NCBI RefSeq assembly: GCF_022045235.1
Contig: NW_027266305.1
Coordinates: 1 to 64,000, forward strand
Reading direction: 5' to 3'
DNA from: Haliotis cracherodii
Taxonomy: Eukaryota
Length of the DNA: 64,000 nucleotides
In this document: positions 1-63,402 of the stretch, piece by piece
Position numbering within the stretch: position 1 is the stretch's first letter
Layout: every line of letters begins with the position of its first letter
Made by a program: the position numbers and the translations under genes
Notes under the pieces: generated by a model
The model's input: the letters and a program-made list of their open reading frames with translations, nothing else
What the model was told of the DNA's origin: nothing
The model's database searches: none

Positions 1-3000
1 CAGCCACCCACACACCCACCCCCCACCCACACCCACACCCCCCCACCCCACCCACACCCACACCACACCCACACCCACCCCCCACACACACACCCACCCC
101 CACACACCACACCCCCCCCCCACACACACCCACACCCACCCCCACACCCACACCACCCCCACCACCCACACCCACCCACACCCACCACCCCCACACCCAC
201 ACCCCCCCCACCCACCCACCACCCACACCCACCCCCCACACACCACCCACCACCACACACCACACCCACCCCACCCACACCACACCCACCCCACACCACA
301 CCCACCCACCCCACCACACCCACACCCACCCCCACACAACCACCACCCTCCACACCCTACCCACCACCCCCCACACTCCACCCACCCACACCCACCCTCC
401 CCCCACACCCACCACCCACTCCCTACCCACCACCCACACCCTCCCACCCCACCACACCCACACCCCCCCCACACCCACCCACCCACACCCACCCACCACC
501 CACCCACCCCACACCCACCCTCCCTCACCCACCACCCCCACACCCACCACCCACACCCCACCCACCCCACACCCCACCCCCACCACCCACACCCACCCAC
601 CACCCACACCCCACCCCCCACCCTCACCCACCCCCACCCCACTCCCACACCCACCCCCCACCCCACCCACACCCCACCACCCCCCCACCCACACCCTCTC
701 CCACCCCCACCCCTCCACCCTACCCACACCCTCCCCCCACACCCTCCACTCCACTACCCACCACCCTCCCCCTATCCCTCCACCCTCTCCTCCCTATCCC
801 ACCACCCTCACCCTCCCTCACCCCTCCACCCACTCACCCACCCTCCCACCACCCTCCTCTCCCTCCCCCCCACCCTCTCCCTATCCCTCCACCCCTCTCC
901 CACCCCCCACCCTCTCCCTATCCCTCCACCCTCCTCACCCACCCCTCCACCCTCTCTCCCTCACCCCTCCACCCCTCTCACACTCCCACCACCCTCCTCT
1001 CCCTATCCCTCCACCCTCTCCCAACCCACACCCACCCCCACCCACCACCCTCTCTCCCCTCCCTCCACCCTCTCTCTCCCTATCCCTCCACCCCTCCCTC
1101 ACCCTCCACCCCTCCACCCTCCTCCCCATCCCTCCACCCTCTCTCCCTCTCCCTCCACCCTCTCTCTCCCTATCCCTCCACCCTCTCTCTCCACTCCCTC
1201 CCTCTCCCTATCCCTCCACCCACCCTCCCACCCCTCTCACCACACCCACCACCCTCTCACCCACACCCTCCCTCTCCCTATCCCTCCACCCTCTCACTCC
1301 ACACCCTCCACCCTCTCCCCCATCCCACCACCCACTCTCTCCTCTCACTCCCTCTCCCTACCCACCACCCCTCACACACCCCCCCACCCTCTCCCAATCC
1401 CTCCACCCACTCTCCCCTCCTCCCCTCACCCATCCCTCCACCCTCTCCCCACCCCCTCTCCCATCCCCCACCCTCTCCCCACCCCCCACCCACACCCACC
1501 CCACCCTCCCTCCCCTATCCCACCACCCTCTCTCTCCCCCCCCCTCTCCCTCACCCTCCACCCTCCACCCTCTCTCTCCTCTCTCTCTCCCTATCCCCCA
1601 CCCTCTCTCTCCTCTCCCTCCCTCTCCCTATCTCACCACCCTCTCTCTCCTCCCCCTCCCTCTCCCTCCACCCTCTCTCTCCTCTCTCTCTCCCTATCCC
1701 CCACCCTCTCTCTCCTCTCCCTCCCTCTCCCTATCCCTCCACCCTCTCTCTCCTCCCCCTCCCTCTCCCTCCACCCTCTCTCTCCTCTCTCTCTCCCTAT
1801 CCCCCACCCTCTCTCTCCTCCCCCTCCCTCACCCTATCCCTCCACCCTCTCTCTCCTCTCCCTCCCTCTCCCTATCCCTCCACCCTCTCCCTCTCCCTCC
1901 ACCCTCTCTCTCCTCTCCCTCCCTCTCCCTATCCCTCCACCCTCTCTCTCCTCTCCCTCCCTCTCCCTATCCCTCCACCCTCTCTCTCCTCTCCCTCCCT
2001 CTCCCTATCCCTCCACCCTCTCTCTCCTCTCCCTCCACCCTCTCTCTCCCTATCCCTCCACCCTCTCTCTCCCCCCCCTCCCTCTCCCTATCCCTCCACC
2101 CTCTCTCTCCTCCCCCTCCCTCTCCCTATCCCTCCACCCTCTCTCTCCTCTCCCTCCCTCTCCCTCCACCCTCTCTCTCCTCTCTCTCTCCCTATCCCCC
2201 ACCCTCTCTCTCCTCTCCCTCCCTCTCCCTATCCCTCCACCCTCTCTCTCCTCTCCCTCCCTCTCCCTATCCCTCCACCCTCTCTCTCCTCCCCCTCCCT
2301 CTCCCTATCCCTCCACCCTCTCTCTCCTCTCTCTCCCTCTCCCTATCCCTCCACCCTCTCTCTCCTCCCCCTCCCTCTCCCTATCCCTCCACCCTCGCTC
2401 TCCTCTCCCGCCCTCTCCCTATCCCTCCACCCTCTCTATCCTCTCCCGCCCTCTCCCTATCCCTCCACCCTCTCTCTCCCTCCCTCTCCCTCCACCCTCT
2501 CTCTCCTCTCTCTCCCTCTCCCTATCCCTCCACCCTCTCTATCCTCTCCCGCCCTCTCCCTATCCCTCCACCCTCTCTCTCCCTCCCTATCCCTCCACCC
2601 TCTCTATCCTCTCTCTCTCCCTCCCTCTCCCTCCATCCTCTCTCTCCCTATCCCTCCACACTCTCTCTCCTCTCCCGCCCTCTCCCTATCCCCCACCCTC
2701 TCTATCCTCTCTCTCTCCCTCCCTCTCCCTATCCCCCACCCTCTCTATCCTCTCTCTCTCCCTCCCTCTCCCTCCATCCTCTCTCTCCCTATCCCTCCAC
2801 CCTCTCTCTCCTCTCCCGCCCTCTCCCTATCCCTCCACCCTCTCTCTCCTCTCCCGCCCTCTCCCTATCCCTCCACCCTCTCTATCCTCTCCCTCCCTCT
2901 CCCTATCCCTCCACCCTCTCTCCCCTCTCCCTCCCTCTCCCTATCCCCCACCCTCTCTCTCCCTATCCCTCCACCCTCTCTCTCCTCTCCCTCCCTCTCC

Positions 3001-3447
3001 CTATCCCCCACCCTCTCTCTCCCTCCCTCTCCCTCCATCCTCTCTCTCCCTCTCCCTCTCCCTCCACCCTCTCTCTCCTCTCCCGCCCTCTCCCTATCCC
3101 TCCACCCTCTCTCTCCTCTCCCTCCCTCTCCCTATCCCCCACCCTCTCTCTCCCTCCCTCTCCCTCCCTCTCCCTCCATCCTCTCTCTCCCTCTCCCTCC
3201 ACCCTCTCTCTCCTCTCCCTCCCTCTCCCTATCCCCCACCCTCTCTCTCTCCCTCCCTCTCCCTCCATCCTCTCTCTCCCTCTCCCTATCCCTCCACCCT
3301 CTCTCTCCTCTCTCTCCCTCTCCCTATCCCCCACCCTCTCTCTCCTCTCTCTCTCCCTCCCTCTCCCTCCATCCTCTCTCTCCCTCTCCCTATCCCTCCA
3401 CACTCTCTCTCTACTCCCTCACTCTCCTCCCTCTCCCTCTCCCCCAC

Positions 3448-3486
<39 letters not shown>
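1..3486. repeat. C-rich low-complexity/polypyrimidine satellite (CCACCCTCTCTCTCCTCTCCCTCCCTCTCCCTATCCCT-like units) ending in (CT)n
   Basis: Almost no G on the + strand. The first ~350 bp are essentially only C/A and grade into CT-rich units. Confidence 0.95.
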
Positions 3487-6456: not shown

Positions 6457-6715
6457 CCGTCGAGGAGGCTCTCTACTAGGGGTCATGGAGGGAACATTTC
6501 AATTCTCAGATATTGTACCTTGTGACTGTATAGCTAGCTGCCTTACAACATACTTTTTTCGTACTTCTTTATGTTCAAATCAACCTTGAACTGTTTATCA
6601 CAATAATTTACGATGTGGTACTTGAGATATTCAGTGACCATCTTTCTCGAACTAGCGCGTTCATTGTCAAAATTATTTCAAATTACCATTTACTGAATGT
6701 TCTGAAACTGTTTAG

Positions 6716-7227
6716 GTTGAAGATGGAGTCAGTTGGTTGAAGACTGAGTCAGCAGGTTGAAGATTGAGTCAGTTGGTTGAAGACTGAGTCAGTTGGTTGA
6801 AGACTGAGTCAGCAGGTTGAAGATTGAGTCAGTTGGTTGAAGATTGAGTCAGTTGGTTGAAGACTGATTCAGTTGGTTGAAGACTGAGTCAGTTGGTTGA
6901 AGATTGAATCAGTTGGTTGAAGATTGAGTCAGTTGGTTGAAGATTGAGTCAGTTGGTTGAAGATTGAGTCAGTTGGTTGAAGACTGAGGTAGTTGGTTGA
7001 AAATGGAGTCAGTTGGTTGAAGATTGAGTCAGCAGGTTGAAGATTGAGTCAGTTGGTTGAAGATGGAGTCAGTTGGTTGGAGACTGTGTCAGTTGGTTGA
7101 TGATTGAGTCAGCAGGTTGAAGATTGAGTCAGTTGGTTGAAGATTGAGTCAGCAGGTTGAAGACTGAGTCAGTTGGTTGAAGACTGAGTCAGTTGGTTGA
7201 AGATTGCGTCAGTTGGTTGAAGACTGA
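6716..7227. repeat. 20-bp minisatellite (GTTGAAGATTGAGTCAGTTG), about 25 copies
   Basis: Direct 20-bp periodicity. Confidence 0.97.
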
Positions 7228-7361: not shown

Positions 7362-10003
7362 TTTCATCATAGTGCTAAGGTTGGTTACCTTCATAGTGCT
7401 AAGGTTGGTTACCTTCATAGTGCTAAGGTTGGTTATTTTCATTGTGCTGAGGTTGGCTACTATCATTGTGCTGAGGTTGGCCACTTTCATAGTGCAAAGG
7501 TTAGCCACTTTCATAGTGCTAAGGTTGGCCACTTTCATAGTGATAAGGATAGTTACTTTCATAGTGCCAAGGTTTTGCTACATTCATAGTGCTAAGGCTG
7601 ACCACTTTCACAGTGATAAGGTTGGCCACCTTCATAGTGTTAACGTTGGCCACTTTCATAGTGCTAAGGTTTTGCTATTTTCATAGTGATAAGGTTGGCC
7701 ACTTTCATGGTGCTAAGGCTGGCCACTTTCATAGTGCAGAGTTTGGACACTTTCATAGTGATAAGGCTGGCTTCTTTTATAGTGCTGAGATTGGACACTT
7801 TCATTGTGCTAAGGTTGGTTACTTTCATAGTGCTAATGTTGGCTTATATCACAGTGATAAGGTTTTGCTTTTTTCATAGTGCTAAGGTTGGCCACTCTCA
7901 TAGTGCAGAGGTTGGCCACTTTCATATGTGCCATGGTTGGCCACTTTCAGAGTGCTGAGGTTGGCCACTTTCATAGTGCTGAGGTTGGCCACTTTCATAG
8001 TGCTAAGGTTGGCCACTTTCATAGTGCTAAGGCTGGCTACTTTCATAGTGCAGAGGCTGGTTACTTTCATAGTGCTAAGGTTTTGCTATTTTCATAGTGA
8101 TGAGGTTGGCCACTTTCATAGTGCTAAGGTTTTGCTATTTTCATAGTGCTAAGGTTGGCCACTTTCATAGTGCAGAGGTTGGCCACTTTCATAGTGCCAT
8201 GGTTGGCCACTTTCAGAGTGCTGAGGTTGGCCACTTTCATAGTGCTGAGGTTGGCCACTTTCATAGTGCTAAGGTTGGCCACTTTCATAGTGCTAAGGTT
8301 GGCTTCTTTTATAGTGCTGAGGTTGGCTACTTTCATAGTACAGAGGCTGGTTACTTTCATAGTGCTAAGGTTTTGCTATTTCCATAGTGATAAGGTTGGC
8401 CACTTTCGTAGTGCTAAGGTTGGCTACATTCATAATGATAAGGCTGGTTACTTTCATAGTGCCAAAGTTTTGCTACATTCATAGTGCTAAGGCTGGTCAC
8501 TTTCATTGTGCTGAGGTTGGCCACTTTTATAGTGCTGAGGTTGGCTACTTTCATAGTGCTAAGGTTTTGCTATTTTCATAGTGCTAAGGCTGACCACTTT
8601 CATAGTGCTAAGGCTGGCCACTTTCATAGTGCTAAAGTTGGCCACTTTCATAGTGCTAACGCTGGACGCTTTCTTAGTGTTAACGTTGCCCACTTTCAAA
8701 GTGCTAAGGTTTTGCTATTTTCATAGTGATAAGGTTGGTCACTTTCATAGTGCTAAGGTTGGCCACTTTCATAGTGCTAAGGTTGGCCACTTTCATAGTG
8801 CTAACGTTGGACGCTTTCTTAGTGTTAACGTTGCCCGCTTTCAAAGTGCTAAGGTTTTGCTATTTTCATTGTGCTGAGGTTGGCCACTTTCATAGTGCTA
8901 AGGTTGGCCACTTTCATAGTGCTAAGGTTGGCCACTTTCATAGTGCTAAGGTTGGCCATGTCATAGTGATAAGGTTTTGCTTTTTTCATAGTGCTAAGGT
9001 TGGCCACTTTCATAATGCAGAGGTTGGCCACTTTCATAATGCCATGATTGGCCACTTTCATAGTGCTGAGGTTGGCCACTTTCATAGTGCTAAGGTTGGC
9101 CACTTTCATAGTGCTAAGGTTGGCCACTTTCATAGTGCTAAGGTTGGCCACTTTCAGAGTGCTGAGGTTGGCCACTTTCATAGTGCTAAGGTTGGCCACT
9201 TTCATAGTGCTAAGGTTGGCCACTTCCATAGTGCTAAGGCTGGCTTCTTTTATAGTGCTGAGGTTGGCTACTTTCATAGTACAGAGGCTGGTTACTTTCA
9301 TAGTGCTAAAGTTGGTTACTTTCATAGTGCTAAGGTTTTGCTATTTTCATAGTGATAAGGTTGGCCACTTTCATAGTGCTAAGGCTGTCCACTTTCATAG
9401 TGCTAAGGTTGGCCATGTCATAGTGCCATGGTTGGCCACTTTCATAGTGCTAAGGTTGGCAACGTCATAGTGATAAGGCTGGTTACTTTCATAGTGCTAA
9501 TGTTGGCTACTTTCATAGTGTTAAGGTTGGCCACTTTCGTTGTGATAAGGTTGGCCACTTTCATAGTGCTAATGTTGGCTACTTTCATAGTGTTAAGGTT
9601 GGACACTTTCATAGTGGTAAGGTTGGCTACTTTCATAGTGCTGAGGTTTGGCTACTTTCATAGTGCTAATGTTGGCTACTTTCATAGTGTTAAGGTTGGA
9701 CACTTTCATAGTGGTAAGGTTGGCCACTTTCATAGTGTTAAGGTTTGGCTACTTTCATAGTGCTAATGTTGGCTACTTTCATAGTGTTAAGGTTGGACAC
9801 TTTCATAGTGCTAAGGTTTGGCTACTTTCATAGTGCTAATGTTGGCTACTTTCATAGTGTTAAGGTTGGACACTTTCATAGTGTTAAGGTTGGACACTTT
9901 CATAGTGCTAAGGTTTGGCTACTTTCATAGTGCTAATGTTGGACACTTTCATAGTGTTAAGGTTGGACACTTTCATAGTGATAAGCTTTGGCTACTTTCA
10001 TAG
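7362..10003. repeat. 24/25-bp minisatellite (CATAGTGCTAAGGTTGGCCACTTT), more than 100 copies
   Basis: Direct periodicity; it generates the spurious LRLATFIV and FHSAKVGH ORFs. Confidence 0.97.
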
Positions 10004-26325: not shown

Positions 26326-28833
26326 ATGCCCAAGTACTACCCGGAGGAGGAAGGGGAGGAACCGAAACAACAGCTTGCCTGCTCTGGCATCCGAGAGGAC
26401 CTCTTGGATTGTCTGCTGAAGAGTGAATGCGTGATGAAGGTAGCTAGAAAGTTGATCGTCAGATAAATCAGTTTTGATAGTGACTGGATGACCCTGTAAT
26501 TGTTTCTGAGCATCATGGCATCTACAAAGTAAATGCTGCACTATCAGGGAAACTGCTTCTGACAACAGATCAAGTCTACAAAATTGAGAATGTAGTGCAA
26601 CCTAATCATTATTAGAAAGCTAATATCTGATAGGCTAAACACTCTTTGGGGGCGTGGGTGGCCCAGTCATCTGAGGCACCGTGATTCCCTGTGCAGCGTT
26701 GCGCCCCTTGGGCATGCCAGAAACCTATGATTTTGGGGTCGAATCCCGGTTCACCCCGATTATGCTTCTAGGTTTGTCAGCTGATATGAGGCTGTTTTGA
26801 CCTGCTCCCCTCTGGCAAATAAATGCAACTTTATTTCTTTGTATTTAGGGGATATAGAAACGGGCTTCTTCTGTACATCCAACAAGCATAACTCAGAAAC
26901 CGTTCAATATTTGTTCATCAAACTTTGCAGGTCTGTCAAGTACATGCGGAACTGGTGCCTTTTGCTTTTTAGAAATTTTAGACATTTTTATTTTTTACTT
27001 TTCCATGGCAACAAGATTGACTTAGGTTCTGTGAGGGTAGGGTTCGTTTCTGCAACATAACTCATAAACCGTTCAATATTTTTTCATGAAACTTTGCAGG
27101 TTTGTCAGGTACACGCTGAATTGGTGCCTTTTGCTATTTAGAAATTTTAGAAATTTTAGAATTTTATATATTTTTACGTTTCCATGGCAGCAAGATTGAT
27201 TTTGGTTCCAAACTCTTCTTTTTTTTACAATTTACATGACAAGTTCCACCTCGGTTAAAAAAGGATAGGGTTTGTTTAGATTTAATATTGTCTTAAATTC
27301 TGCAACAGTGGCGGGGGATATAGCAACTTTAGTGGCAAACTCTTGTTTATTTTATGATTGAGGCTTTTGGGAGTTGCATTAAATTGATCACTGAATGATT
27401 AAAATGATAACCCATCCTTATGACTTCCACCTGTTCCACTTGCAGGATGGTAAGACCCCCAGGGAGTGTCTGCAGCTCGGCCGCCACCCTAGCATACCAA
27501 ACAAGTGTCATAACCTCCGAACAGCCTTCTTCGAGTGTAAACGATCAATTGTAAGTGTTAATTGTTATATTTGCCTATTAGAAGTTTGTAATAACAAGAC
27601 ATTTGTAAGATGCAAGGATGACCACTCACTGTTGCGATGGTTCAGTATAGATGTAAGTGTGTGTGATAATGGTGCTAGCATCTGTACTGAAACATCGCGT
27701 TGTGTTCATCCATACAAATTGCTTGTTGTTTAACACTGTGTGCCAAACTCTTGGAGTCTCCACTTTAGACATGTCGCTTGACTTTATCTGAATATGTGTC
27801 GTGTTCCATCCATGACCATAGTCAAGTCCCTAATCAATTAATGTTGTAGCGATAAAAAAATCCAAATTTGCCCACACAGAATTGATTAATGATGTACCTT
27901 TAACCACAGATTACTTTATTTGTATATACTGTATGTGAGTGTTTCATTGCACCAATTGTTTGAAGACCGCCTCCGTGGTCTTGTGGTAGAGCATCCGCCC
28001 GGAGAGCGGAAGGTCCGGAGTTCGATCCCCGGCCGTGTCATACCAAAAGATGTTAAAAGATGGTACTTGTTGTTACCCTGTCTGGCGCTCGGCATTAAGG
28101 GGCTAAAACAAGGACTGGTCGGCTCGCAGTCAGTATACTGTGTCTGAGTGGGGTATTCATGTTAAACTGCGGCATGGTATCTCAGTGGGCTAGCACTATA
28201 AATCGGCATCAGTCTGGACTAGTACAAGCAGCCACACAAACACACACACGTACATGCACGTCGCTATATAAGTGCAATAATCTTGGACGCGACGTTAAAC
28301 CCAATTTCACCTCACCTCCAATTGTTTGACTAAATAATGTACATTGTATCTGTGTTCATTATAATAAAAACAATTATGATAAGGAGGAGAATATATGGAA
28401 GTCAACTTCTTCTTTATTATGAGGAACACAACGTTTCGGAGTATATGCTTACTCCTTCAACATTCACCTCATGAAGGAGTTAGCATATACTCTAAAACGT
28501 TGTGTTCTTCATAATAAAGAAGTTGACATCCATGTATTCTCCTTCTTATATGCATCACTTCTAAATGCCATTCAAAGACCAAAAATGATGATGCCATGAA
28601 GTGAACATATTTAACGGCATCCTTGGTATATTTTCCTTTTCTTCCTGTTCTATATGCTGTAAGGTTCGTTTGATGTACTGAAAATAGCAACAGAACAATA
28701 TTGCAGCAGCACAACAAATTCTTACTATCACAGCCAACACCTTAAGTGTAATATAGATGTTAGAGGAATGACGACTCTCCTCTCGTTTCAGCTTGACATG
28801 CGCAGCAGGTTCCGTGGAAGGAAGGGCTACTGA
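26326..28833 (+). CDS. COA5: Cytochrome c oxidase assembly factor 5 (PET191 family, twin CX9C-like), 86 aa
   Basis: Exons 26326-26439 (MPKYYPEEEGEEPKQQLACSGIREDLLDCLLKSECVMK), 27446-27550 (DGKTPRECLQLGRHPSIPNKCHNLRTAFFECKRSI) and 28792-28833 (LDMRSRFRGRKGY*), joined by phase-0 GT-AG introns. MPKYY, FFECKRS and RFRGRKGY are COA5 hallmarks. Confidence 0.96.
26647..26781 (+). mobile_element. SINE family C, 5' half
   Basis: Head ggggcgtgggtggcccagt ... gtcgaatccc; truncated next to the HINE-like element. Confidence 0.75.
26795..27347 (+). mobile_element. Helentron-associated non-autonomous element (HINE/DINE-like)
   Basis: Two ~170-bp internal repeats (cataactca..aaaccgttcaatat..aaactttgcagg..ccatggca), 3' end GGCGGGGGATAT...CTTGTTT, T-rich target. 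Confidence 0.6.
27965..28318 (+). mobile_element. SINE family D (tRNA head, Meta-domain-like centre, (CACCT)n tail)
   Basis: B box GTTCGATCCC, central gtcataccaaaagatgttaaaagatggtac...ggcgctcggcattaaggg, TSD ccaattgtttga. Confidence 0.9.
28379..28549. mobile_element. Inverted pair of Penelope-like element 3' ends with degenerate hammerhead motifs
   Basis: ~80-bp arms (28379-28459 and 28471-28549) that match the PLE end at 63050-63125. Both HHR cores are broken (one truncated, one CTCATGA/TAAAAC). Confidence 0.75.
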
Positions 28834-34430: not shown

Positions 34431-35350
34431 GCCTTGGAGTGCAGCGTTAAACAATAAACAAACAAACAAAACAACACACACACGTGCGCGTGTCCTCGTC
34501 AACATTCAACCTAGGATTACAATGTTGCCAATAAATAACATTATACACCAAATGTTATAGACAGTTTATTGGAGGTCCACACTAGCACGTCTTTTTAAAT
34601 GAACCTCCATCGATGCCACGCTAGAATTAAAACAATGAAAATTGTCAATGGTATTAAAACATTATAATATAATACCAAAACGTGTATACTTGTTCACTTG
34701 ACATGAACCCGGCGAGCACTACATTTGTGTATTTATTATTATTATAATAATCATATACATAATATATGATGAATACCATAGTGACCTGACAAATATTACG
34801 TTTTCAAATTTGCGTCTGTGAAAAATTCAACACATGACATAGACTGTAGAGATATTCTTTTTTCAACTGACGTAGACGCTACACTTTTTTATTTACGTTA
34901 CATCCGGGCATCATCTTAACGCCCTGCAAATTTTCCATCGTACAAAACTTGGCTAACCCGATCCTATTTTCATCCATATTCTTTAAGGAGTTGTCATTAA
35001 ATACATCCAGTCTTTCCACACGGTAGGCGTTTATCGTCGCCGGCACTAGTGGTAAATATATATAGTGCAGTGGGTAATATATAACGGCACATTTGAACTA
35101 TACAACCCTACACATGATGTTTAACACCTGGTAGATATACTTCAGTCGACACACTTTCTGAAAAAGCATGGCAAAATACAATAATGCGTCAAACAGGAGG
35201 CCACTTAACTCAGTTAATCAACATTTTTCAGTGTTAAGGTTTTGGGGTTTTTACGGTATGTCTCGAAACTTAAGGCATCGTGTTTTTAATTTGGCTTCAT
35301 CCAATTATCTGAATAGTACTTGTTATCTATTCAATGTTAATCTGCTGCTT

Positions 35351-37222
35351 ATCACAACATGTCATGCACATATACCTCTCATCACTTGGTCGGTGTCACT
35401 CCAGCCTGATAACAGTGTGAGAATCTACATCACAACATGTCATGCACATATACCTCTCATCACTTGGTCGGTGTCACTCCAGCTTGATAATGATGTAAGA
35501 ATCTACATCACAACATGTCATGCACATATACCTCTCATCACTTGGTCGGTGTCACTCCAGCTTAATAACGGTGTAAGAATCTACATCACAACATGTCATG
35601 CACATATACCTCTCATCGCTTGGTCGGTGTCACTCCAGCTTAATAACAGTGTGAGAATCTACATCACAACATGTCATGCACATATACCTCTCATCACTTG
35701 GTCGGTGTCACTCCAGCTTGATAATGATGTAAGAATCTACATCACAACATGTCATGCACATATACCTCTCATCACTTGGTCGGTGTCACTCCAGCTTAAT
35801 GACGGTGTAAGAATCTACATCACAACATGTCATGCACATATACCTCTCATCACTTGGTCGGTGTCACTCCAGCTTAATAACGGTGTAAGAATCTACATCA
35901 CAACATGTCATGCACATATACCTCTCATCACTTGGTCGGTGTCACTCCAGCTTTATAACGGTGTAAGAATCTACATCACAACATGTCATGCACATATCCC
36001 TCTCATCACTTGGTCGGTGTCACTCCAGCTTTATAACGGTGTAAGAATCTACATCACAACATGTCATGCACATATCCCTCTCATCACTTGGTCGGTGTCA
36101 CTCCAGCTTTATAACGGTGTAAGAATCTACATCACAACATGTCATGCACATATCCCTCTCATCACTTGGTCGGTGTCACTCCAGCTTGATGACGGTGTAA
36201 GAATCTACATCACAACATGTCATGCACATATACCTCTCATCGCTTGGTCGGTGTCACTCCAGCTTAATAACGGTGTAAGAATCTACATCACAACATGTCA
36301 TGCACATATACCTCTCATCACTTGGTCGGTGTCACTCCAGCTTAATAACGGTGTAAGAATCTACATCACAACATGTCATGCACATATACCTCTCATCACT
36401 TGGTCGGTGTCACTCCAGCTTTATAACGGTGTAAGAATCTACATCACAACATGTCATGCACATATACCTCTCATCACTTGGTCGGTGTCACTCCAGCTTG
36501 ATGACGGTGTAAGAATCTACATCACAACATGTCATGCACATATACCTCTCATCACTTGGTCGGTGTCACTCCAGCTTAATAACGGTGTAAGAATCTACAT
36601 CACAACATGTCATGCACATATACCTCTCATCACTTGGTCGGTGTCACTCCAGCTTGATGACGGTGTAAGAATCTACATCACAACATGTCATGCACATATA
36701 CCTCTCATCACTTGGTCGGTGTCACTCCAGCTTAATAACGGTGTAAGAATCTACATCACAACATGTCATGCACATATACCTCTCATCACTTGGTCGGTGT
36801 CACTCCAGCTTGATGACGGTGTAAGAATCTACATCACAACATGTCATGCACATATACCTCTCATCACTTGGTCGGTGTCACTCCAGCTTGATGACGGTGT
36901 AAGAATCTACGTCACAACATGTCATGCACATATACCTCTCATCACTTGGTCGGTGTCACTCCAGCTTGATGACGGTGTAAGAATCTACATCACAACATGT
37001 CATGCACATATACCTCTCATCACTTGGTCGGTGTCACTCCAGCTTGATGACGGTGTAAGAATCTACATCACAACATGTCATGCACATATACCTCTCATCA
37101 CTTGGTCGGGGTCACTCCAGCTTGATGACGGTGTAAGAATCTACATCACAACATGTCATGCACATATACCTCTCATCACTTGGTCGGTGTCACTCCAGCT
37201 TGATGACGGTGTAAGAATCTAC
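35351..37222 (+). repeat. 78-bp satellite, 24 copies, apparently derived from a PLE hammerhead region
   Basis: Exact 78-bp period. Each unit contains AGC-TTGATGA-CGGTGTA..TACATC-ACAAC-ATGTC. The array is followed by a PLE-like end (agaagttg..atccat). Confidence 0.95.
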
Positions 37223-37989
37223 GTCGCTATATACAATATACCAGAAGTTGTTATCCATAAAGTTGTACGTCTTTCTTACTACGTTTGCCAACTTCTAGAA
37301 TGCCAATCAAACAGTCATTATTTTTTAAACCCTACATTGAATTTTAGAACCGGTCACCGAGGTAAGTACTATGTTCAACGCCATGTTACTCTTGGATGAA
37401 TGATTATCTAAAATTAAAGGATTAACCAGTTTGATTGTAGTGATGAGATGCTAAGCCCCAGGCGCTGTAACCAGCCCGCGTGTGTTGTCATGACAGTCAG
37501 GTGATGGCCGGTGACAGCCCGCCTTTGTAGTCGGGGATCGTGTTTGTGTCAGTGACGTGTGTAAGCGTCCTCCAGGTGTGTGGAATGCCACTAACATGGT
37601 TATTAATTTAATACCACTCTACATGTTTCGCATTCATCAACATGTCCTCCTAAGACCACCATCAGCTGTCCCGATAGTCTGGCCCGTACAACTCAGGTGG
37701 TTTCTATAGATACATGTATATGGCAAACATCCAACTCTCTTTCAGTTGTATTTATTTAAAGGGGCCTTGGCTGCAATTAATGTGCTGTCCCAGCATTTTA
37801 ATTTGAGTCAATGAAAAATGGTATATTCTCTGTTTGCTTATTTAACATTTACGATGTCTATCGTTTGTAGTTAATTATTCCCATAATGAGTGAACGAGTA
37901 GTTTCGTACATGACATTAACGACAACGTCAGATAACGTCAGACCAAGTCTGGGAATTAGGTACAGTTCTGTGGAACATCTCCCCAGGGT

Positions 37990-38775
37990 CAGATACGGCT
38001 CATTCACCTGCGAAACAGATTCGTAACGACGACGGCAGCAACAGCGTTGGGACATCCCATTAGCCAACGTACAGTACTACGACGACTTCGTGCTGCTGGA
38101 ATCCGAGCGTATCGTCCTTTCCGAGGAATGGTACTGACTGCTCGACATCGACGCCTGAGACAGCGGTGGGCGAGGCAGGTTCGACGCTGGCAAGTGAGAA
38201 ATTGGCGTCGAGTGCTGTTTACTGATGAAAGTCGGTTTAACTTGTTTCCAAATGACGGCAGAGAACGAGTTTATCGACGCAGAGGGGAACGTTTGGCTCC
38301 GGCGTGTATTCGAGAGGTCCATCCATTCGGCGGGGGAGGTGTCATGGTGTGGGGCGGTATTTGTGGAGATCAGAAGACTGATTTGGTGTTTATACAGGGA
38401 AAGCTGAATGCTGTGCAGTTCAGAGACCAAGTGATGCAGCCAGTTGTGCTTCCGTTCTTACAAAACCAACAGCAGGGGACATTGTTTCAACACGACAATG
38501 CCAGGCCCCATACTGCAAGACTGACTCGGAACTTTCTAAACCAGCAGAACGTTGACGTTTTGCCCTGGCCTGCCCACTCACCCGATATGAATCCTATTGA
38601 ACATCTGTGGGACCATCTTGACAGACAGATTAGAGCACGCCATCAGCCTCCCGTCAACAGACAAGAATTACAGCAGGCCCTGAGAGAAGAGTGGCAACGG
38701 ATTCCAGTCCACGTCATCAGAAGACTGACGTGATCGACGAGGCGGCATATCACAGCATGCATTGAGGCAGCTGTG
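37990..38775 (+). pseudogene. Tc1-family (DD34E) transposase, 5'-truncated with a premature stop
   Basis: TDESRF, VMVWGGI, FQHDNARPH and WPAHSPDMNPIEHLW motifs. No ATG or N-terminal HTH; stop at 38731 comes before the C-terminal ACIEA. No TIRs found. Confidence 0.92.
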
Positions 38776-52133: not shown

Positions 52134-54110
52134 TCTCTGTCGCCCGCCTACTCTCTGTCATCCGCCTACTCTCTATCATCCGTCTACTCTCTGTCATCCG
52201 TCTACTCTCTGTCATCCGTCTACTCTCTGTCATCCGTCTACTCTCTGTCATCCGCCTACTCTCTGTCATCCGTCTACTCTCTGTCATCCGTCTACTCTCT
52301 GTCATCTGCCTACTCTCTGTCATCCGTCTACTCTCTGTCATCCGTCTACTCTCTGTCATCAATCTACTCTCTGTCATCTATCTACACCCTGTCATCCGTC
52401 TACTCTCTGTCATTCGTCTACTCTCTGTCATCCGCCTACTCTCTGTCATCCGTCTACTCCCTGCAATCCGTCTACTCTCTGTCATCCGACTACTCTCTGT
52501 CATCCGCCTACTCTCTGTCATCCGTCTACTCTCTGTCATCCGTCTACTCTCTGTCATCCGTCTACTCCTTGTCATCCGCCTACTCTCTGTCATCCGTCTA
52601 CTCCTTGTCACCCGTCTACTCTCTGTCATCCACCTACTCTCTGTCATCCGTCTACTCCTTGTCATCCGCCTACTCTCTGTCATCTTTCTACTCTCTGTCA
52701 TCCGTCTGCTCTCTGTCATCCGTCTACTCTTTGTCATCCGTCTACTCCTTGTCATCCGTCTACTCTCTGTCATCCGTCTACTCTCTGTCATCCGTCTACT
52801 CTCTGTCATCCATCCGTCTACTCTCTGTCATCCGTCTACTCTCTGTCATCCGTCTACTCTCTGGCATCCGTCTGCTCCTTGTCATCCGTCTACTCCTTGT
52901 CACCCCCTACTCTCTGTCATCCGCCTACTCTCTGTCATCCGTCTACTCTCTATTATCCGTCTACTCTCTATTATCCGTCTACTCCTTGTCATCCGCCTAC
53001 TCTCTGTCATCCGTCTACTCTCTGTCATCCATCCGTCTACTCCTTGTCATCCGCCTACTCTCTGTCATCCGTCTACTCCTTGTCATCCGCCTACCCTCTG
53101 TCATCCGCCTACTCTCTCTCATCCGTCTACTCCTTGTCACCCGTCTACTCTCTGTCACCTGTCTACTCTCTGTCATCCGTCTACTCTCTGTCATCCGTCT
53201 ACTCTCTGTCATCCATCCGTCTACTCTCTGTCATCCGTCTACTCTCTGTCATCCGTCTACTCTCTGTCATCCGTCTACTCCTTGTCATCCGCCTACCCTC
53301 TGTCATCCGTCTACTCCTTGTCATCCGCCTACCCTCTGTCATCCGCCTACTCTCTGTCATCCGCCTACTCCTTGTCATCCGTCTACTCTCTGTCATCCGC
53401 CTACTCTCTGTCATCCGCCTACTCTCTGTCATCCGTCTACTCTCTGTCATCCGTCTACTCCTTGTCATCCGCCTACTCTCTGTCATCCGTCCACTCTCTG
53501 TCATCCGTCTACTCTCTGTCATCCGTCTACTCCTTGTCATCCGCCTACTCTCTGTCATCCGTCTACTCTCTGTCATCTGTCTACTCCTTGTCATCCGCCT
53601 ACTCTCTGTCATCCGTCCACTCTCTGTCATCCGTCTACTCTCTGTCATCCGTCTGCTCCTTGTCATCCGTCTACTCCTTGTCACCCCCTACTCTCTGTCA
53701 TCCGCCTACTCTCTGTCATCCGTCTACTCTCTATTATCCGTCTACTCTCTTTTATCCGTCTACTCCTTGTCATCCGCCTACTCTCTGTCATCCGTCTACT
53801 CTCTGTCATCCATCCGTCTACTCCTTGTCATCCGCCTACTCTCTGTCATCCGTCTACTCCTTGTCATCCGCCTACCCTCTGTCATCCGTCTACTCTCTGT
53901 CATCCGTCTACTCTCTGTCATCCGTGTACTCTCTGTCATCCGTCTACTCCTTGTCATCCGCCTACTCTCTCTCATCCGTCTACTCCTTGTCACCCGTCTA
54001 CTCTCTGTCACCTGTCTACTCTCTGTCATCCGTCTACTCTCCGACATCCGTCTACTCTCTATTATCCGTCTACTCTCTGTCACCTGTTTACTCCCTGTCA
54101 TTCATCTACT
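52134..54110. repeat. 18-bp minisatellite (CTACTCTCTGTCATCCGT), about 110 copies
   Basis: Direct periodicity; source of the spurious 673, 684 and 430-aa ORFs. Confidence 0.97.
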
Positions 54111-55268
54111 GTATGTGATCTGTCTATCACCTGTCATTCTGTTACGAGCAAATATAATGACAACTAAGTAACCATATACCTTTAACACATCCCAGCGTGA
54201 TATATCCTTTTTCCTTCAGCAAGTGAACTTGTGAGTTTTGTGAAAACAACTGTGCTTATAAGACGACGAATCTACTACGTACACAGGACAATGATTGGAA
54301 GCGCATGTACGAAGGCCGGCCATAAGAAACTTCTCGATCGCGATCAAGATAATCTCTACCTGGACTGTCTCCAGTTGAATGTTTGATCACTCGACGTGGA
54401 ATCCAAGAGGTCAGAGGTCACTTTGATAATGTGATAATAGTCTCCCGATGTGTCACCAGATGTTATATGACCGCAGTAAGTTGGTTTTTGTACAATTGCG
54501 ATTCTTAACTAAATATGTCTGAGAAATATATTGTGGAAAATATTTAAAACTGAGAACTACTTGTCAGTTGTTGGGTCGTTTTTTCAATTTAACTTTGAGA
54601 TTGCAGCTAAAATAATTGAGAAGATTTGGAAGTTATAAAGACATTCTAAAGGAAACATTTTATTTTTTTTATATCAGAAAGGTTCAATATATTTTCAAGA
54701 AGAATAGGCGAAGGCGACTGTGCCTTTCTGTACTATTAGACGCGGGTAGAATATAAGGTATCGTTCTTGTGTTCGCACGATAATATGGATTGTCAGTTTG
54801 GCGCGGGATACTTGTATGGGTATTGCAAGACCTATGTCCCTCACCGACACTGCACATATATATGATTGAAGTGGACGTAAAATCCCCAGAGAACTCCTGC
54901 AATTCGCCGTGCTTGCAATATCGCGCTGGTTATTCTACATATTCTGAAATCGAAATATTGTTTGGATTATGCAATTTTTTCATATATTAGTAGTAAAAGC
55001 ATTTTTTGAACAGTCGAACAATGTTGAATATGTACACAGACAATTAAATTGATAGTTCAATACACCAAGAGAGTAGGCACATGATGATAATTTATTCAGA
55101 ATAGATATGTCATGGCCGCCGTCATATAGCTGGAATATTGCCGAGTGCGGCGTTAAACAACAAACAACAACAAAAAAAGATATTTCATGAAATAATACAT
55201 CAGCAGTTTCTTTAAAGTGTTACGGCAATTTGGTTACTTTAAGGTTTTGCTGACAAGCATAACAAGAC

Positions 55269-58793: not shown

Positions 58794-58961
58794 GGGGCGG
58801 TCGGGTAGCCTAGTGGTTAAAGCGTTCGCTCGTCACGCCGAAGACCCGGGTTCGATTCCCGACATGGGTACAATGTGTGAAGCCCATTCCTGGTGTCCCC
58901 CGCCGTGATATTGCTGGAATATTGCTAAAAGCGGCGTAAAACCATACTCACTCACTCACTC
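58794..58961 (+). mobile_element. SINE family B, near-consensus young copy
   Basis: Intact CpGs; TSD tcatggcgctca. Confidence 0.93.
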
Positions 58962-63015: not shown

Positions 63016-63082
63016 AAGGCATTTAGAAGTGATACACATAGGGAGGGGAGTTTATAGATGTCAACTTCTTTATTTTGAGGAA

Positions 63083-63122
63083 CACAACGTTTCGGAGTAT
63101 ATGCTTACTCCTTCATCAGGTG
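63083..63122 (-). ncRNA. Minimal type I hammerhead ribozyme in a PLE 3' end
   Basis: The minus strand reads CAC-CUGAUGA-A-GGAGUA-agcaua-UACUCC-GAAAC-GUU-GUG: helix I CAC/GUG, 6-bp helix II, and a loopless palindromic (AACGUU) helix III. Confidence 0.8.
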
Positions 63123-63402
63123 ATTGAATGATGTGTATATATATACAGAGAGAGAGATATTTGGAGATTTTACGAGCGCTTCAGCCTCTGGCTATTTCGC
63201 ACTCGGTATATATATACACGTAACAACAAAAGTAACAAGATAACAAAAGCTGGAAACTTAACAAGGGAAGACAACAGATAATTAACGCTGATAGGTAATT
63301 AGCAAAAGACAATAGAAGCCAACACTCTACAGTAATTAGCGCTAATAGTTATGGACAACTGGAAGCCAGGATTAAATTATCACTGATTGGTAATTGACAA
63401 TG

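What the first reader, a model, noticed from the sequence alone, without database searches (positions are those of the whole stretch)
35351..37285. 24 x 78-bp satellite built from a broken hammerhead ribozyme of a Penelope-like element
Seen: each unit carries AGC-(C/T)TGATGA-C, a GGTGTA/TACATC hairpin and then ACAAC-AT-GTC. This is the hammerhead layout CUGAUGA-helix II-GAAAC-palindrome-GUC, with GAAAC replaced by ACAAC. After the last unit comes GTCGCT, whose GCT could pair with the AGC before the core (helix I). Next is agaagttg..atccat, which resembles the PLE ends at 28510-28535 and 63050-63075. Nearly all unit-to-unit variation falls in or just after the core-equivalent segment (cctgataa, cttaataa, ctttataa, cttgatga), and the 3' copies are homogenised to TTGATGA. 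Known: tandem hammerhead satellites and retrozymes occur in animals, and PLEs carry minimal hammerheads. Inference: microhomology between an upstream atcacaacatgtc and an ancestral atcgaaacatgtc seeded the amplification, leaving a fossil ribozyme array. The 743-aa ORF is a by-product.
Basis: partly seen in the sequence, partly recalled or inferred. Interest (0 to 1): 0.8.

Follow-up and report, generated by a model that had tools for sequence, protein, structure and literature searches.

The report
Minisatellite from a Penelope retrotransposon tail
A 78-base piece of the tail of an old Penelope-like retrotransposon, holding two thirds of its small hammerhead ribozyme, has been copied 24 times in a row; the copies lack essential ribozyme parts, so this is most likely an inert by-product.

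Summary
The array is 24.0 copies of a 78-bp unit at 35351-37222, 97% alike.

In 20 single-unit relatives fetched from the same genome, the unit is followed by GAAAC-GTC-GCT. Exact GAAAC is present in 13 of 20. Long copies continue upstream into a decayed RT/GIY-YIG-type ORF. The array therefore sits in the 3' tail of a 5'-truncated Penelope-like element (PLE).

Three corrections:
- The parental core is UUGAUAA (16 of 20; CUGAUGA 0 of 20). This is the published U3-A8 covariant of the PLE minimal dimeric hammerhead (PMC4209133, passages).
- Helix III is GAAAC-GUC, with no AU.
- The array is not unique. The same unit junction occurs at five array loci. The same tail also gave 64/65-bp arrays without any ribozyme part and a 54-bp array with the whole motif.

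No unit can cleave: GAAA is absent in 24 of 24. The array most likely arose by exchange between two similar octamers 78 bp apart, then travelled with the retrotransposon.

It is an ordinary transposon-tail minisatellite. The scan had already noted tandem hammerhead modules elsewhere in this genome (s1-823298, s1-834481).

The parts
35289..35350 (+). 5'-truncated start of the PLE 3' UTR (62 bp) that precedes the array
   Evidence: Most of the 20 dispersed copies align to window 35289-35430. The 5' ends of the copies vary while the 3' ends are fixed.
35351..37222 (+). 24 x 78-bp tandem array. Unit columns: 53-55 AGC (helix I 5' strand), 56-62 core-equivalent, 63 bulged C, 64-69 GGTGTA, 70-75 loop AGAATC. 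Columns 76-78 plus 1-3 of the next unit give TACATC, then ACAAC in place of GAAAC.
   Evidence: The homologous single-copy segment is present in 20 of 20 dispersed copies.
37200..37222 (+). Last unit's ribozyme remnant: TTGATGA (37200-37206), C (37207), GGTGTA (37208-37213), AGAATC (37214-37219), TAC (37220-37222)
   Evidence: aligned to the parental motif. The next 8 parental bases (ATCGAAAC) are missing.
37223..37317 (+). PLE tail after the ribozyme cleavage-site triplet: GTCGCT...AGAAGTTGTTATCCATAAAGTTG...CAAACAGTCA, the fixed 3' end of the element
   Evidence: Dispersed copies align to 37145-37313/37328 and diverge after ...CAAACAGTTA.
35168..37399 (+). 743-aa open frame through the array (78 = 26 codons); a by-product
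   Evidence: The Pfam matches are sums of tiny repeated matches; for the four with E at or below 2e-5 no single stretch passes on its own. The variable columns 58 and 61 are first codon positions (D/N/Y, N/D).
63089..63119 (-). Canonical minimal hammerhead of a second PLE family, CTGATGA-A-GGAGTA-AGCATA-TACTCC-GAAAC, with the same layout as the parent of the array
   Evidence: (1 match, 0.40 expected by chance). 1316 such motifs genome-wide against 20 controls.
28380..28540 (.). Two head-to-head truncated tails of that second family, each starting inside the hammerhead

Best explanation
The array is a variable-number tandem repeat inside the 3' tail (pLTR-type untranslated end) of an old, 5'-truncated Penelope-like retrotransposon insertion at 35289-37317.

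In single-copy form this tail carries a minimal, dimer-type hammerhead of the U3-A8 kind: AGC-UUGAUAA-C-GGUGUA-AGAAUC-UACAUC-GAAAC-GUC-GCU.

Two similar octamers lie 78 bp apart: ATCACAAC upstream, and ATCGAAAC at the end of helix II. An exchange between them duplicated the stretch in between. The exchange could have been unequal crossing-over, replication slippage, or a template switch during reverse transcription. Later unequal exchange raised the copy number.

Each unit therefore keeps the helix I 5' strand, the core heptamer and helix II. It has ACAAC where G12-A13-A14 should be, so no unit can self-cleave.

The array was probably already present in the RNA of a transposing sub-lineage and arrived here by retrotransposition. 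It has no function of its own, and the long ORF is accidental.

Shown: the anatomy, the parental form, the PLE link and the multi-locus spread.
Inferred: the exchange mechanism, the order of events and the lack of function.
For: Array.

Parental form: 20 of 20 fetched dispersed copies hold one unit flanked by window-like 35289-35350 and 37223-37317. GAAAC is exact in 13 of 20 and GAAA in 15 of 20. TTGATAA is in 16 of 20. GTC follows GAAAC in 11 of those 13.

Retroelement behaviour: fixed 3' end with variable 5' truncation, and head-to-head pairs.

PLE link:
- Copy L032 runs from ...VIYKINCDCGDSYIGK... through a stop into this tail.
- That piece is 65% identical (E = 5e-23) to the C-terminus of an intact 594-aa ORF of a sister family. 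A 279-aa frame of the array's own family is 47% identical to that ORF (E = 3e-50).
- The 594-aa ORF hits RVT_1 at 5e-11. Its UTR has TTGACAA-C-GGTATA-AGGATC-TATACC-GAAAC-GTC.

Fit to the published motif (PMC4209133, passages): no helix III loop, helix II of 6-8 bp, an unpaired base at its 5' end, a short helix I, and U3-A8 covariation.

Genome counts for heptamer + N{14,24} + CGAAACGT:
- CTGATGA 1316 (control 20)
- TTGATAA 2664 (control 24)
- CTGATAA 143 (control 15)
- TTGATGA 182 (control 17)

Helix II: 6 of 6 pairs in 41 of 113 motifs found in the fetched loci and 5 of 6 in 39, against 19 of 5000 random pairs with 6 of 6. The families differ by changes on both sides: GGUGUA/UACAUC, GGUAUA/UAUACC, GGAGUA/UACUCC, GGGGCA/AGCCCC.

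Spread: the junction GAATCTAC|ATCACAACATGTC with at most 1 mismatch occurs at 58 places, with 0 on the reverse strand and 0 in controls. These are C42 23, C78:59.5 Mb 21, C3 9 + 3, C6 1, and one unrelated place.

Shared history:
- The C78 array (78 bp x 22.1) has unrelated flanks and a different 5' truncation.
- It shares TCGG and the unit haplotypes TTAATAACGG and CTGATAACAG with the window array.

Boundaries at short repeats elsewhere in the same tail: 64/65-bp arrays between two GTTGTTGTC, and a 54-bp array between two CCAG.

Age: contigs of two related organisms bridge the left flank/element boundary with 7 and 9 differences in 261 bases.
Against: - No Rfam hammerhead model matches the array end (E up to 10), the window at gathering score, or 16 of the 20 dispersed loci. 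I have not checked whether Rfam's hammerhead models cover the loop-less minimal form.
- Pfam does not recognise the GIY-YIG part above threshold (best E = 0.089).
- The three decayed ORF pieces gave no Pfam family.
- Self-cleavage of the U3-A8 parental motif was not tested here. Published PLE minimal hammerheads cleave poorly in vitro (PMC4209133, passages).
- Five of 20 parental copies read ACATGGAAAC, which breaks the closing pair of helix II.
- The excess of variation in columns 56-69 of the array (p = 0.0003) is not explained by neutral decay. It is absent from the dispersed copies: 1.13 against 1.53 non-majority letters per column.
- Whether the array or only the element is present in the related organisms could not be resolved.
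Confidence: 0.85

Rival explanations
1. The arrays are made anew at each insertion. The PLE reverse transcriptase repeatedly switches back on its template at the octamer microhomology near the stable helix II hairpin ('stuttering'), rather than the array being inherited from an array-bearing source or grown by genomic unequal exchange.
For: Every array examined sits directly upstream of a PLE tail and at the 5' end of a truncated copy: for the 78/81-bp arrays, for the 44, 46 and 54-bp arrays. Copy numbers differ between insertions of one type (24, 22.1, 13.3, 4, 2). L042 holds a partial extra unit between two GAAAC-bearing junctions. PLE RT starts internally on its template, which is unusual behaviour (PMC11167929, abstract and passages).
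Against: Units copied repeatedly from one template unit would be identical at birth. Yet the window and C78 arrays share several unit haplotypes in mixed order. The 64/65-bp arrays do not include the hairpin. No experiment on template switching by PLE RT was seen in the passages read.
Confidence: 0.12
2. The array is a retrozyme-like product. Hammerhead self-cleavage, circularisation and rolling-circle reverse transcription produced the multimer, which later lost GAAA.
For: Tandem repeats carrying type I hammerheads are known in animals and have been tied to PLE pLTRs (PMC7229834, passages; bioRxiv 10.64898/2026.07.22.740005, abstract and section 14). This genome has arrays of complete minimal hammerheads.
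Against: The unit boundary is not at the cleavage site GUC|G. It lies between two octamers, and the unit lacks both GAAA and the cleavage-site context in all 24 units. Loss of GAAA would have to be ancestral to every unit at all five array loci. At 78 bp the unit is far below the 150-450 bp reported (PMC7229834, passages).
Confidence: 0.03
3. The repeat encodes a real repetitive protein (743 aa, 26-residue repeats), or is otherwise maintained for a host function.
For: One frame is open across the whole array. A 108-nt contig identical to 36267-36374 is present in a run guessed to be RNA (X20).
Against: With 26 codons and six frames an open frame is expected by chance (own estimate: about 0.29 per frame). 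The Pfam matches are repeat-summed; for the four with E at or below 2e-5 no single stretch passes on its own. The frequent variants change first codon positions. The sequence is plainly transposon UTR. X20's nature as RNA is a guess, and the flanks of the ORF are uncovered in it.
Confidence: 0.02

Closest known systems
Minimal dimeric hammerhead (min-HHR) of Penelope-like elements, including the U3-A8 core covariant (Cervera & de la Pena 2014, PMC4209133; passages read)
   Same: The parental single-copy motif has every listed trait: it lies in the PLE terminal non-coding region, has no helix III loop (ACGU palindrome), a 6-bp helix II, one unpaired base at its 5' end, a 3-bp helix I, and U3-A8 instead of C3-G8.
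   Different: The array unit is only the 5' two thirds of that motif, with ACAAC in place of GAAAC. Only 2 of 24 units keep the U3-A8 pair. Activity was not tested.
Non-LTR retrozymes and classical hammerhead satellites (PMC7229834, passages; bioRxiv 10.64898/2026.07.22.740005, abstract and section 14). Newt satellite 2 and schistosome SM-alpha appear in the passages only as unnamed amphibian and schistosome repeats; the names are recalled.
   Same: Tandem repeats descended from the hammerhead-bearing terminal region of PLEs, found at several loci.
   Different: Those units are 150-450 bp and each holds a complete, cleaving hammerhead and yields circular RNA. Here the unit is 78 bp and ribozyme-dead, and its boundary is a microhomology rather than the cleavage site.
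Satellites and minisatellites born from internal tandem repeats of transposable elements (general knowledge, recalled; a review, PMC12692304, appeared only in a search listing)
   Same: A short segment of a transposon's non-coding part is amplified head to tail and carried to several loci by the element.
   Different: The donor here is a PLE tail, and the unit happens to include a ribozyme fragment. My two searches listed no paper describing a satellite built from a truncated PLE hammerhead. I read only the listings of those.

Membership tests
PLE minimal hammerhead (min-HHR) | Core CUGANGA, or its U3-A8 covariant UUGANAA | tested here: met
   Parental copies: TTGATAA in 16 of 20, CTGATGA in 0 of 20. 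A sister family has TTGACAA. Array units: TTGATAA in only 2 of 24; the rest have mispaired or altered cores.
PLE minimal hammerhead (min-HHR) | GAAA (G12-A15.1) directly after helix II | tested here: not met
   Array units: 0 of 24, with ACAAC in that place, and the last unit has lost 8 nt there. Parental copies do meet it: GAAAC in 13 of 20, GAAA in 15 of 20. The array is therefore derived from the family, but its units are not members.
PLE minimal hammerhead (min-HHR) | Long helix II (6-8 bp) with an unpaired base at its 5' end | tested here: met
   C + GGUGUA/UACAUC, 6 pairs including one G-U, with a 6-nt loop. Across 113 motifs in the fetched loci, 80 have at least 5 of 6 pairs, against 181 of 5000 random pairs. 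The bulge is C in 78 and A in 31.
PLE minimal hammerhead (min-HHR) | No helix III loop; a palindrome that can pair between two copies; cleavage triplet GUH | tested here: met
   Parental GAAAC-GUC, with the ACGU palindrome. GTC follows GAAAC in 11 of 13 copies. This is absent from the array units.
PLE minimal hammerhead (min-HHR) | Self-cleavage (as a dimer) | not testable with these tools
   An MFE cofold of two parental motifs did not form the intermolecular ACGU helix, but thermodynamic folding is no test of catalysis.
Rfam hammerhead families | Match to a curated covariance model | tested here: not met
   No hammerhead hit in the window at gathering score, in 36900-37500 at E up to 10, or in 16 of the 20 dispersed loci at E up to 10.
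Penelope-like element | Reverse transcriptase ORF | tested here: met
   The sister-family 594-aa ORF hits RVT_1 at E = 5e-11, 43.1 bits against a cutoff of 29.6. The array's own family has a decayed 279-aa frame 47% identical to it, E = 3e-50.
Penelope-like element | C-terminal GIY-YIG endonuclease | tested here: inconclusive
   The motif ...VVYKIDCNCGQSYVGETSRPINTRIKEH... is visible, and its relative lies upstream of the array-type tail. Pfam gives only SegE_GIY-YIG at E = 0.089, below the cutoff. An Atlas neighbour cluster carries PF01541 in 47% of its members (a lead only).
Penelope-like element | Fixed 3' end, variable 5' truncation, frequent head-to-head partial copies | tested here: met
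   median 3' ends within about 20 bases, 5' starts spread over more than 400 bases. Inverted pairs in L021 and L048 and at window 28380-28540.
Non-LTR retrozyme | Each tandem unit holds a complete hammerhead and is bounded by its cleavage site; units of 150-450 bp; circular RNA | tested here: not met
   The unit is 78 bp, lacks GAAA, and its boundary lies between two octamers. Circular RNA could not be tested.

The most novel reading that the evidence does not exclude
The hammerhead end of PLE tails may be a recurrent birthplace of satellites in this genome. One tail family alone produced arrays of 54, 64/65 and 78/81 bp. Two other families produced 44-, 46- and 87-bp arrays, and each array abuts a PLE tail.

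This could reflect template switching by the PLE reverse transcriptase around the structured, dimer-forming ribozyme.

The 44-54-bp arrays hold one complete minimal hammerhead per unit, with helix III formed between neighbouring units. They could be the smallest self-processing, retrozyme-like repeats known. The 78-bp array would be the dead-end product of the same process.
Probability: 0.15. Interest if true: 0.7.

Novelty: new member of a known kind. Interest (0 to 1): 0.35.

Why it matters
The array is a clean, fully traceable case of a minisatellite born from a retrotransposon tail. The single-copy parent, the two octamers that define the unit, the sister arrays with the same junction, and the coding part of the parent element are all recoverable from one genome.

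It also shows that a repeat that looks like a ribozyme array can be catalytically dead from birth, which matters for anyone counting hammerheads in animal genomes by loose motif searches.

The parental motif adds thousands of natural U3-A8 minimal hammerheads: 2664 TTGATAA...CGAAACGT matches against 24 controls. This sits beside 1316 C3-G8 ones in the same genome, a convenient natural set for testing that core covariation.

The array itself is unlikely to have a function.

Tried and rejected
Rfam: there was no hammerhead match at gathering score in the window. There was none at E up to 10 at the array end, and none in 16 of the 20 dispersed loci. This neither supports nor excludes the minimal form.

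Ancient duplication: I tested whether the two octamers are relics of an older duplication of the whole ribozyme segment. Local alignment of the 75 bases before against the 80 bases from the second GTTGTTGTC, in 5 copies, found only the 9-10-nt repeat. The number of 500 shuffles reaching the observed score was 5, 430, 25, 92 and 162. The idea is not supported.

Pfam on three decayed ORF pieces of the family returned 0 families.

Pfam on the 743-aa ORF returned five families. The four with E at or below 2e-5 (NigD_N, NifT and two others) have 0 stretches passing on their own, so they are repeat artefacts.

Folding: MFE folds of two array units pair GGUGUA with the upstream UAUACC, not with UACAUC. 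A cofold of two parental motifs did not give the hammerhead dimer. This is uninformative for catalysis.

Reads: the contigs could not show whether the related organisms have the array or how many units. They break at 35360 and 37284/37288. No run on record as RNA holds the stretch.

Target-site duplication: TTTTTAA lies next to the 5' boundary (35283-35289) and 4 bases past the 3' end (37322-37328). It is too low in complexity to count.

An earlier count said GAAAC in 17 of 20. The proper count is 13 of 20 (corrected in entry 4).

They may already show arrays like those in 'noticed in passing'.
Full report
1. THE OBSERVATION

Tandem Repeats Finder reports one array at 35351-37222. It has period 78, 24.0 copies, 97% matches and no indels.

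Cutting it into 24 units shows 11 variable columns out of 78. Unit columns read as follows:
- 53-55: AGC
- 56-62: a heptamer that is TTGATAA by column majority
- 63: C
- 64-69: GGTGTA
- 70-75: AGAATC
- 76-78 plus 1-3 of the next unit: TACATC
- 4-8: ACAAC
- 9-13: ATGTC

Seven of the 11 variable columns lie in columns 56-69. That is 7 of 14 against 4 of 64 elsewhere (Fisher p = 0.0003). TTGATGA fills units 11, 15, 17 and 19-24. The 743-aa frame (35168-37399) is the only ORF of at least 100 aa over the array.

2. WHERE THE UNIT COMES FROM

A search of the window's own genome (1.18 Gb in 80 contigs; the window is C42:1-64000) used the last two units plus 178 bases downstream. It returned 169 matches from 1717 first-look candidates, of which 40 were scored. 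Most dispersed matches cover one unit plus about 93 bases downstream.

I fetched 20 such places. All 20 align to window 35289-35430 and to 37145-37313/37328. The window therefore holds a copy of a dispersed element of roughly 235 bases in which the central 78 bases were multiplied.

The copies end at one place (...CAAACAGTTA) but start at different places. This is the signature of a 5'-truncating retroelement.

Two long copies continue upstream into coding sequence. L032 reads ...VIYKINCDCGDSYIGKNSRPVDTRIKE..., then a stop, then this tail.
- That piece is 65% identical (E = 5e-23) to the C-terminus of an intact 594-aa ORF of a sister family in the same genome (L069).
- A 279-aa frame of the array's own family is 47% identical to the same ORF (E = 3e-50).
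- The 594-aa ORF hits RVT_1 at E = 5e-11.
- It ends in a GIY-YIG-looking block...VVYKIDCNCGQSYVGETSRPINTRIKEH.... Pfam scores that block only at E = 0.089.
- Atlas neighbours are animal RT clusters, one of which carries GIY-YIG in 47% of its members (a lead only).

Together with the head-to-head partial copies, this is a Penelope-like element (PLE). The endonuclease domain is recognised by eye and by homology between copies, not by a curated threshold.

3. THE PARENTAL MOTIF IS A PLE MINIMAL HAMMERHEAD

In the single-unit copies the stretch reads CCAGC-TTGATAA-C-GGTGTA-AGAATC-TACATC-GAAAC-GTC-GCT. Counts over the 20 copies:
- TTGATAA: 16
- CTGATGA: 0
- exact GAAAC: 13
- GAAA: 15
- GTC after GAAAC: 11 of those 13

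Passages of Cervera & de la Pena 2014 (PMC4209133) describe the PLE 'min-HHR'. It sits in the terminal repeats and has no helix III loop, so two copies must pair. It has a long helix II, a short helix I and an unpaired base at the 5' end of helix II. In Schistosoma Cercyon elements it shows a core covariation, U3-A8 instead of C3-G8. The parental motif here has each of these traits.

The sister family has TTGACAA-C-GGTATA-AGGATC-TATACC-GAAAC-GTC. A third family, present in the window at 63089-63119 on the minus strand, has the canonical CTGATGA-A-GGAGTA-AGCATA-TACTCC-GAAAC-GTT (1 match, 0.40 expected).

Genome-wide counts for heptamer + N{14,24} + CGAAACGT:

| Heptamer | Matches | Reversed-pattern controls |
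|---|---|---|
| CTGATGA (paired) | 1316 | 20 |
| TTGATAA (paired) | 2664 | 24 |
| CTGATAA (mispaired) | 143 | 15 |
| TTGATGA (mispaired) | 182 | 17 |

These are copies, not independent events. They still show that both paired cores belong to prolific families, and that the mispaired forms occur at the level expected of decay.

Helix II is supported across families by changes on both sides: GGUGUA/UACAUC, GGUAUA/UAUACC, GGAGUA/UACUCC, GGGGCA/AGCCCC. Of 113 motifs found in the loci I held, 41 have 6 of 6 pairs and 39 have 5 of 6, against 19 of 5000 random pairs with 6 of 6.

Against this, no Rfam hammerhead model matches anything here. Five of the 20 copies read ACATGGAAAC, which spoils the closing pair. 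Catalysis was not tested.

4. WHAT THE ARRAY UNIT IS

The unit runs from ATCACAAC, upstream in the UTR, to just before ATCGAAAC, which is the end of helix II plus GAAAC. The two octamers agree at 6 of 8 places and both are followed, closely, by GTC.

The unit-to-unit junction ...GAATCTAC|ATCACAAC... replaces G12-A13 by A-C. All 24 units therefore lack GAAA.

After the last unit the window reads TCTAC|GTCGCT, where the parental copies read TCTAC-ATCGAAAC-GTCGCT. Eight bases are missing between two AC dinucleotides. Not even the terminal copy is a whole ribozyme.

Only 2 of 24 units keep U3-A8. Nine have U3 with G8 and one has C3 with A8. The units are dead by sequence.

5. THE ARRAY IS NOT UNIQUE AND PROBABLY TRAVELLED

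The junction string, allowing one mismatch, occurs at 58 places, all on one strand, with 0 in the control:
- 23 in the window
- 21 at C78:59.5 Mb
- 9 and 3 at two places on C3
- 1 on C6 (a two-unit copy)
- 1 in an unrelated decayed motif

The C78 array is 78 bp x 22.1. Its flanks are unrelated to the window's and its element reaches further 5'. It shares the diagnostic TCGG and the derived unit haplotypes TTAATAACGG and CTGATAACAG with the window array. Its last unit is still followed by ATCAAAA before a later insertion.

The two C3 arrays (81 bp x 13.3 and x 4) share their own diagnostic changes and again have different flanks.

The simplest reading is that sub-lineages of the element carried the array in their RNA and left it at several places. 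A reverse-transcription 'stutter' at each insertion is the main rival. Shared, intermixed unit variants argue against it.

Contigs of two related organisms bridge the left flank/element boundary (35100-35360; 9 and 7 differences). One also bridges the right boundary. The insertion is therefore older than their split. Whether they have the array could not be seen.

6. THE RIBOZYME IS NOT WHAT SEEDS AMPLIFICATION

The same tail produced several other arrays:
- 65-bp arrays at three places on C56 (x 29, x 39, x 8) and a 64-bp array on C1 (x 32.5). Their unit lies between two GTTGTTGTC repeats and contains no ribozyme part.
- A 54-bp array on C8 (x 74.8). Its unit lies between two CCAG and contains the whole motif.

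Two other PLE families produced 46-bp (x 31), 44-bp (x 12.8) and 87-bp (x 6.4) arrays of complete minimal hammerheads. One search shows the 46- and 44-bp arrays ending in a PLE tail.

Short direct repeats set the boundaries in every case. I tested whether the two octamers are remnants of an older duplication and found no support.

7. WHAT REMAINS UNEXPLAINED

The excess of variable columns in the core-equivalent segment of the array is real. It is absent from the 20 dispersed copies, where that segment is among the best kept.

Part of it is CpG decay (columns 63-64). Part may reflect unit types that also exist as variants among dispersed copies, for example ACAGTGTGAG in L036 and TTAATAA in L025. 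That hints at exchange between copies. I cannot decide this.

A run guessed to be RNA holds a 108-base contig identical to 36267-36374, while the flanks are uncovered. This is a hint of transcription, not proof.

8. COMPARISON WITH WHAT IS KNOWN, AND NOVELTY

- PLE minimal hammerheads and their U3-A8 variant are published (PMC4209133, passages).
- Tandem hammerhead repeats of 150-450 bp (non-LTR retrozymes) are published (PMC7229834, passages).
- The descent of those repeats from PLE pLTRs has been proposed (bioRxiv 10.64898/2026.07.22.740005, abstract and section 14).
- Minimal hammerheads 'in tandem' in axolotl PLEs are mentioned (PMC7229834, a passage pointing to a supplement I could not open).

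The array fails the retrozyme definition: its hammerhead is incomplete, its unit is 78 bp, and its boundary is not at the cleavage site. It is best filed as a transposon-tail minisatellite that happens to include a ribozyme fragment. That makes it a new member of a known kind.

Two searches listed no paper describing a satellite built from a truncated PLE hammerhead. I read only the listings.

The scan's own notes had already flagged the intact hammerhead at 63050-63125 (s1-826566). They had also flagged tandem hammerhead modules from Penelope-type termini on other pieces of this genome (s1-823298, s1-834481).

9. VERDICT

It needs correction on the core type, on the helix III sequence, on uniqueness and on the role of the ribozyme.

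Confidence in the PLE-tail minisatellite reading is 0.85, and interest is 0.35. The bolder possibility concerns the neighbouring 44-54-bp complete-hammerhead arrays and a reverse-transcriptase-driven origin of all these arrays. I rate it at 0.15.

Noticed in passing
L072 540-1949 (G000:C1:67136339-67137748): A 46-bp x 31 array. Each unit is one complete canonical minimal hammerhead (TTCAC-CTGATGA-A-GGAGTA-AGCATA-TACTCC-GAAAC-GTT-GTGTTCA), and the array ends in a PLE tail. In a multimeric transcript, neighbouring units could supply helix III (ACGU/ACGU). The MFE fold of one such span shows helices II and III.
   Followed up: partly
L073 684-4718 (G000:C8:25484683-25488717): A 54-bp x 74.8 array from the same PLE family as the finding. 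Its unit lies between two CCAG and holds the whole U3-A8 motif, but mostly with GTG at the cleavage triplet. An inverted partial copy precedes it and the PLE tail follows.
   Followed up: partly
L074 486-1045 and L075 286-840 (G000:C1:54.257 Mb and 29.193 Mb): Arrays of 44 bp x 12.8 and 87 bp x 6.4, built of complete minimal hammerheads of further PLE families (CTGATGA-A-GGGGCA-ATAAGT-AGCCCC-GAAAC; and the window-63089 type).
   Followed up: no
L044, L045, L046 (G000:C56:49.11, 49.49, 49.95 Mb) and L047 (C1:1.313 Mb): 65-bp (x 29.1, 39.1, 8.1) and 64-bp (x 32.5) arrays from the same PLE tail, just upstream of the hammerhead. The unit lies between two GTTGTTGTC repeats. Homology between loci stops at the element's edges.
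   Followed up: partly
window 63089-63119 (-) and 28380-28540: An intact canonical minimal hammerhead of a second PLE family, and two head-to-head truncated tails of that family that begin inside the ribozyme. Already noted by the scan as s1-826566.
   Followed up: partly
window 4-3485, 6715-7227, 7367-10003, 52134-54126: The window is the start of contig C42 and is rich in other repeats. There is a degenerate C/A- and C/T-rich low-complexity tract (GC skew about -1). There are minisatellites of 20 bp x 25.6, 24 bp x 109 and 18 bp x 110; the last underlies the 673-684-aa ORFs.
   Followed up: no
window 26112-26183 and 58799-58870: Two tRNA-like sequences just above the Rfam tRNA threshold (30.6 and 30.1 bits) with several non-standard pairs. 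They look more like tRNA-derived SINE heads than genes. A similar one is in L030.
   Followed up: no
window 38047-38733: A 228-aa frame that looks like a Tc1/mariner transposase C-terminal half (...DNARPH...PDMNPIEHLWD...). The name is recalled from the motif and was not tested.
   Followed up: no
L041 3145-3560 (G000:C78:59519644-59520059): The sister 78-bp array on C78 was later split from its tail by a roughly 410-bp insertion containing a tRNA-like box (GGTTCGAATCCC). The insertion landed inside the hammerhead's GAAA.
   Followed up: no
window 36267-36374: Run X20 is guessed by the tool to be RNA. It holds a 108-base contig identical to this stretch of the array, while both unique flanks are uncovered. 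This may be transcription of the array, or repeat DNA in a small data set.
   Followed up: no
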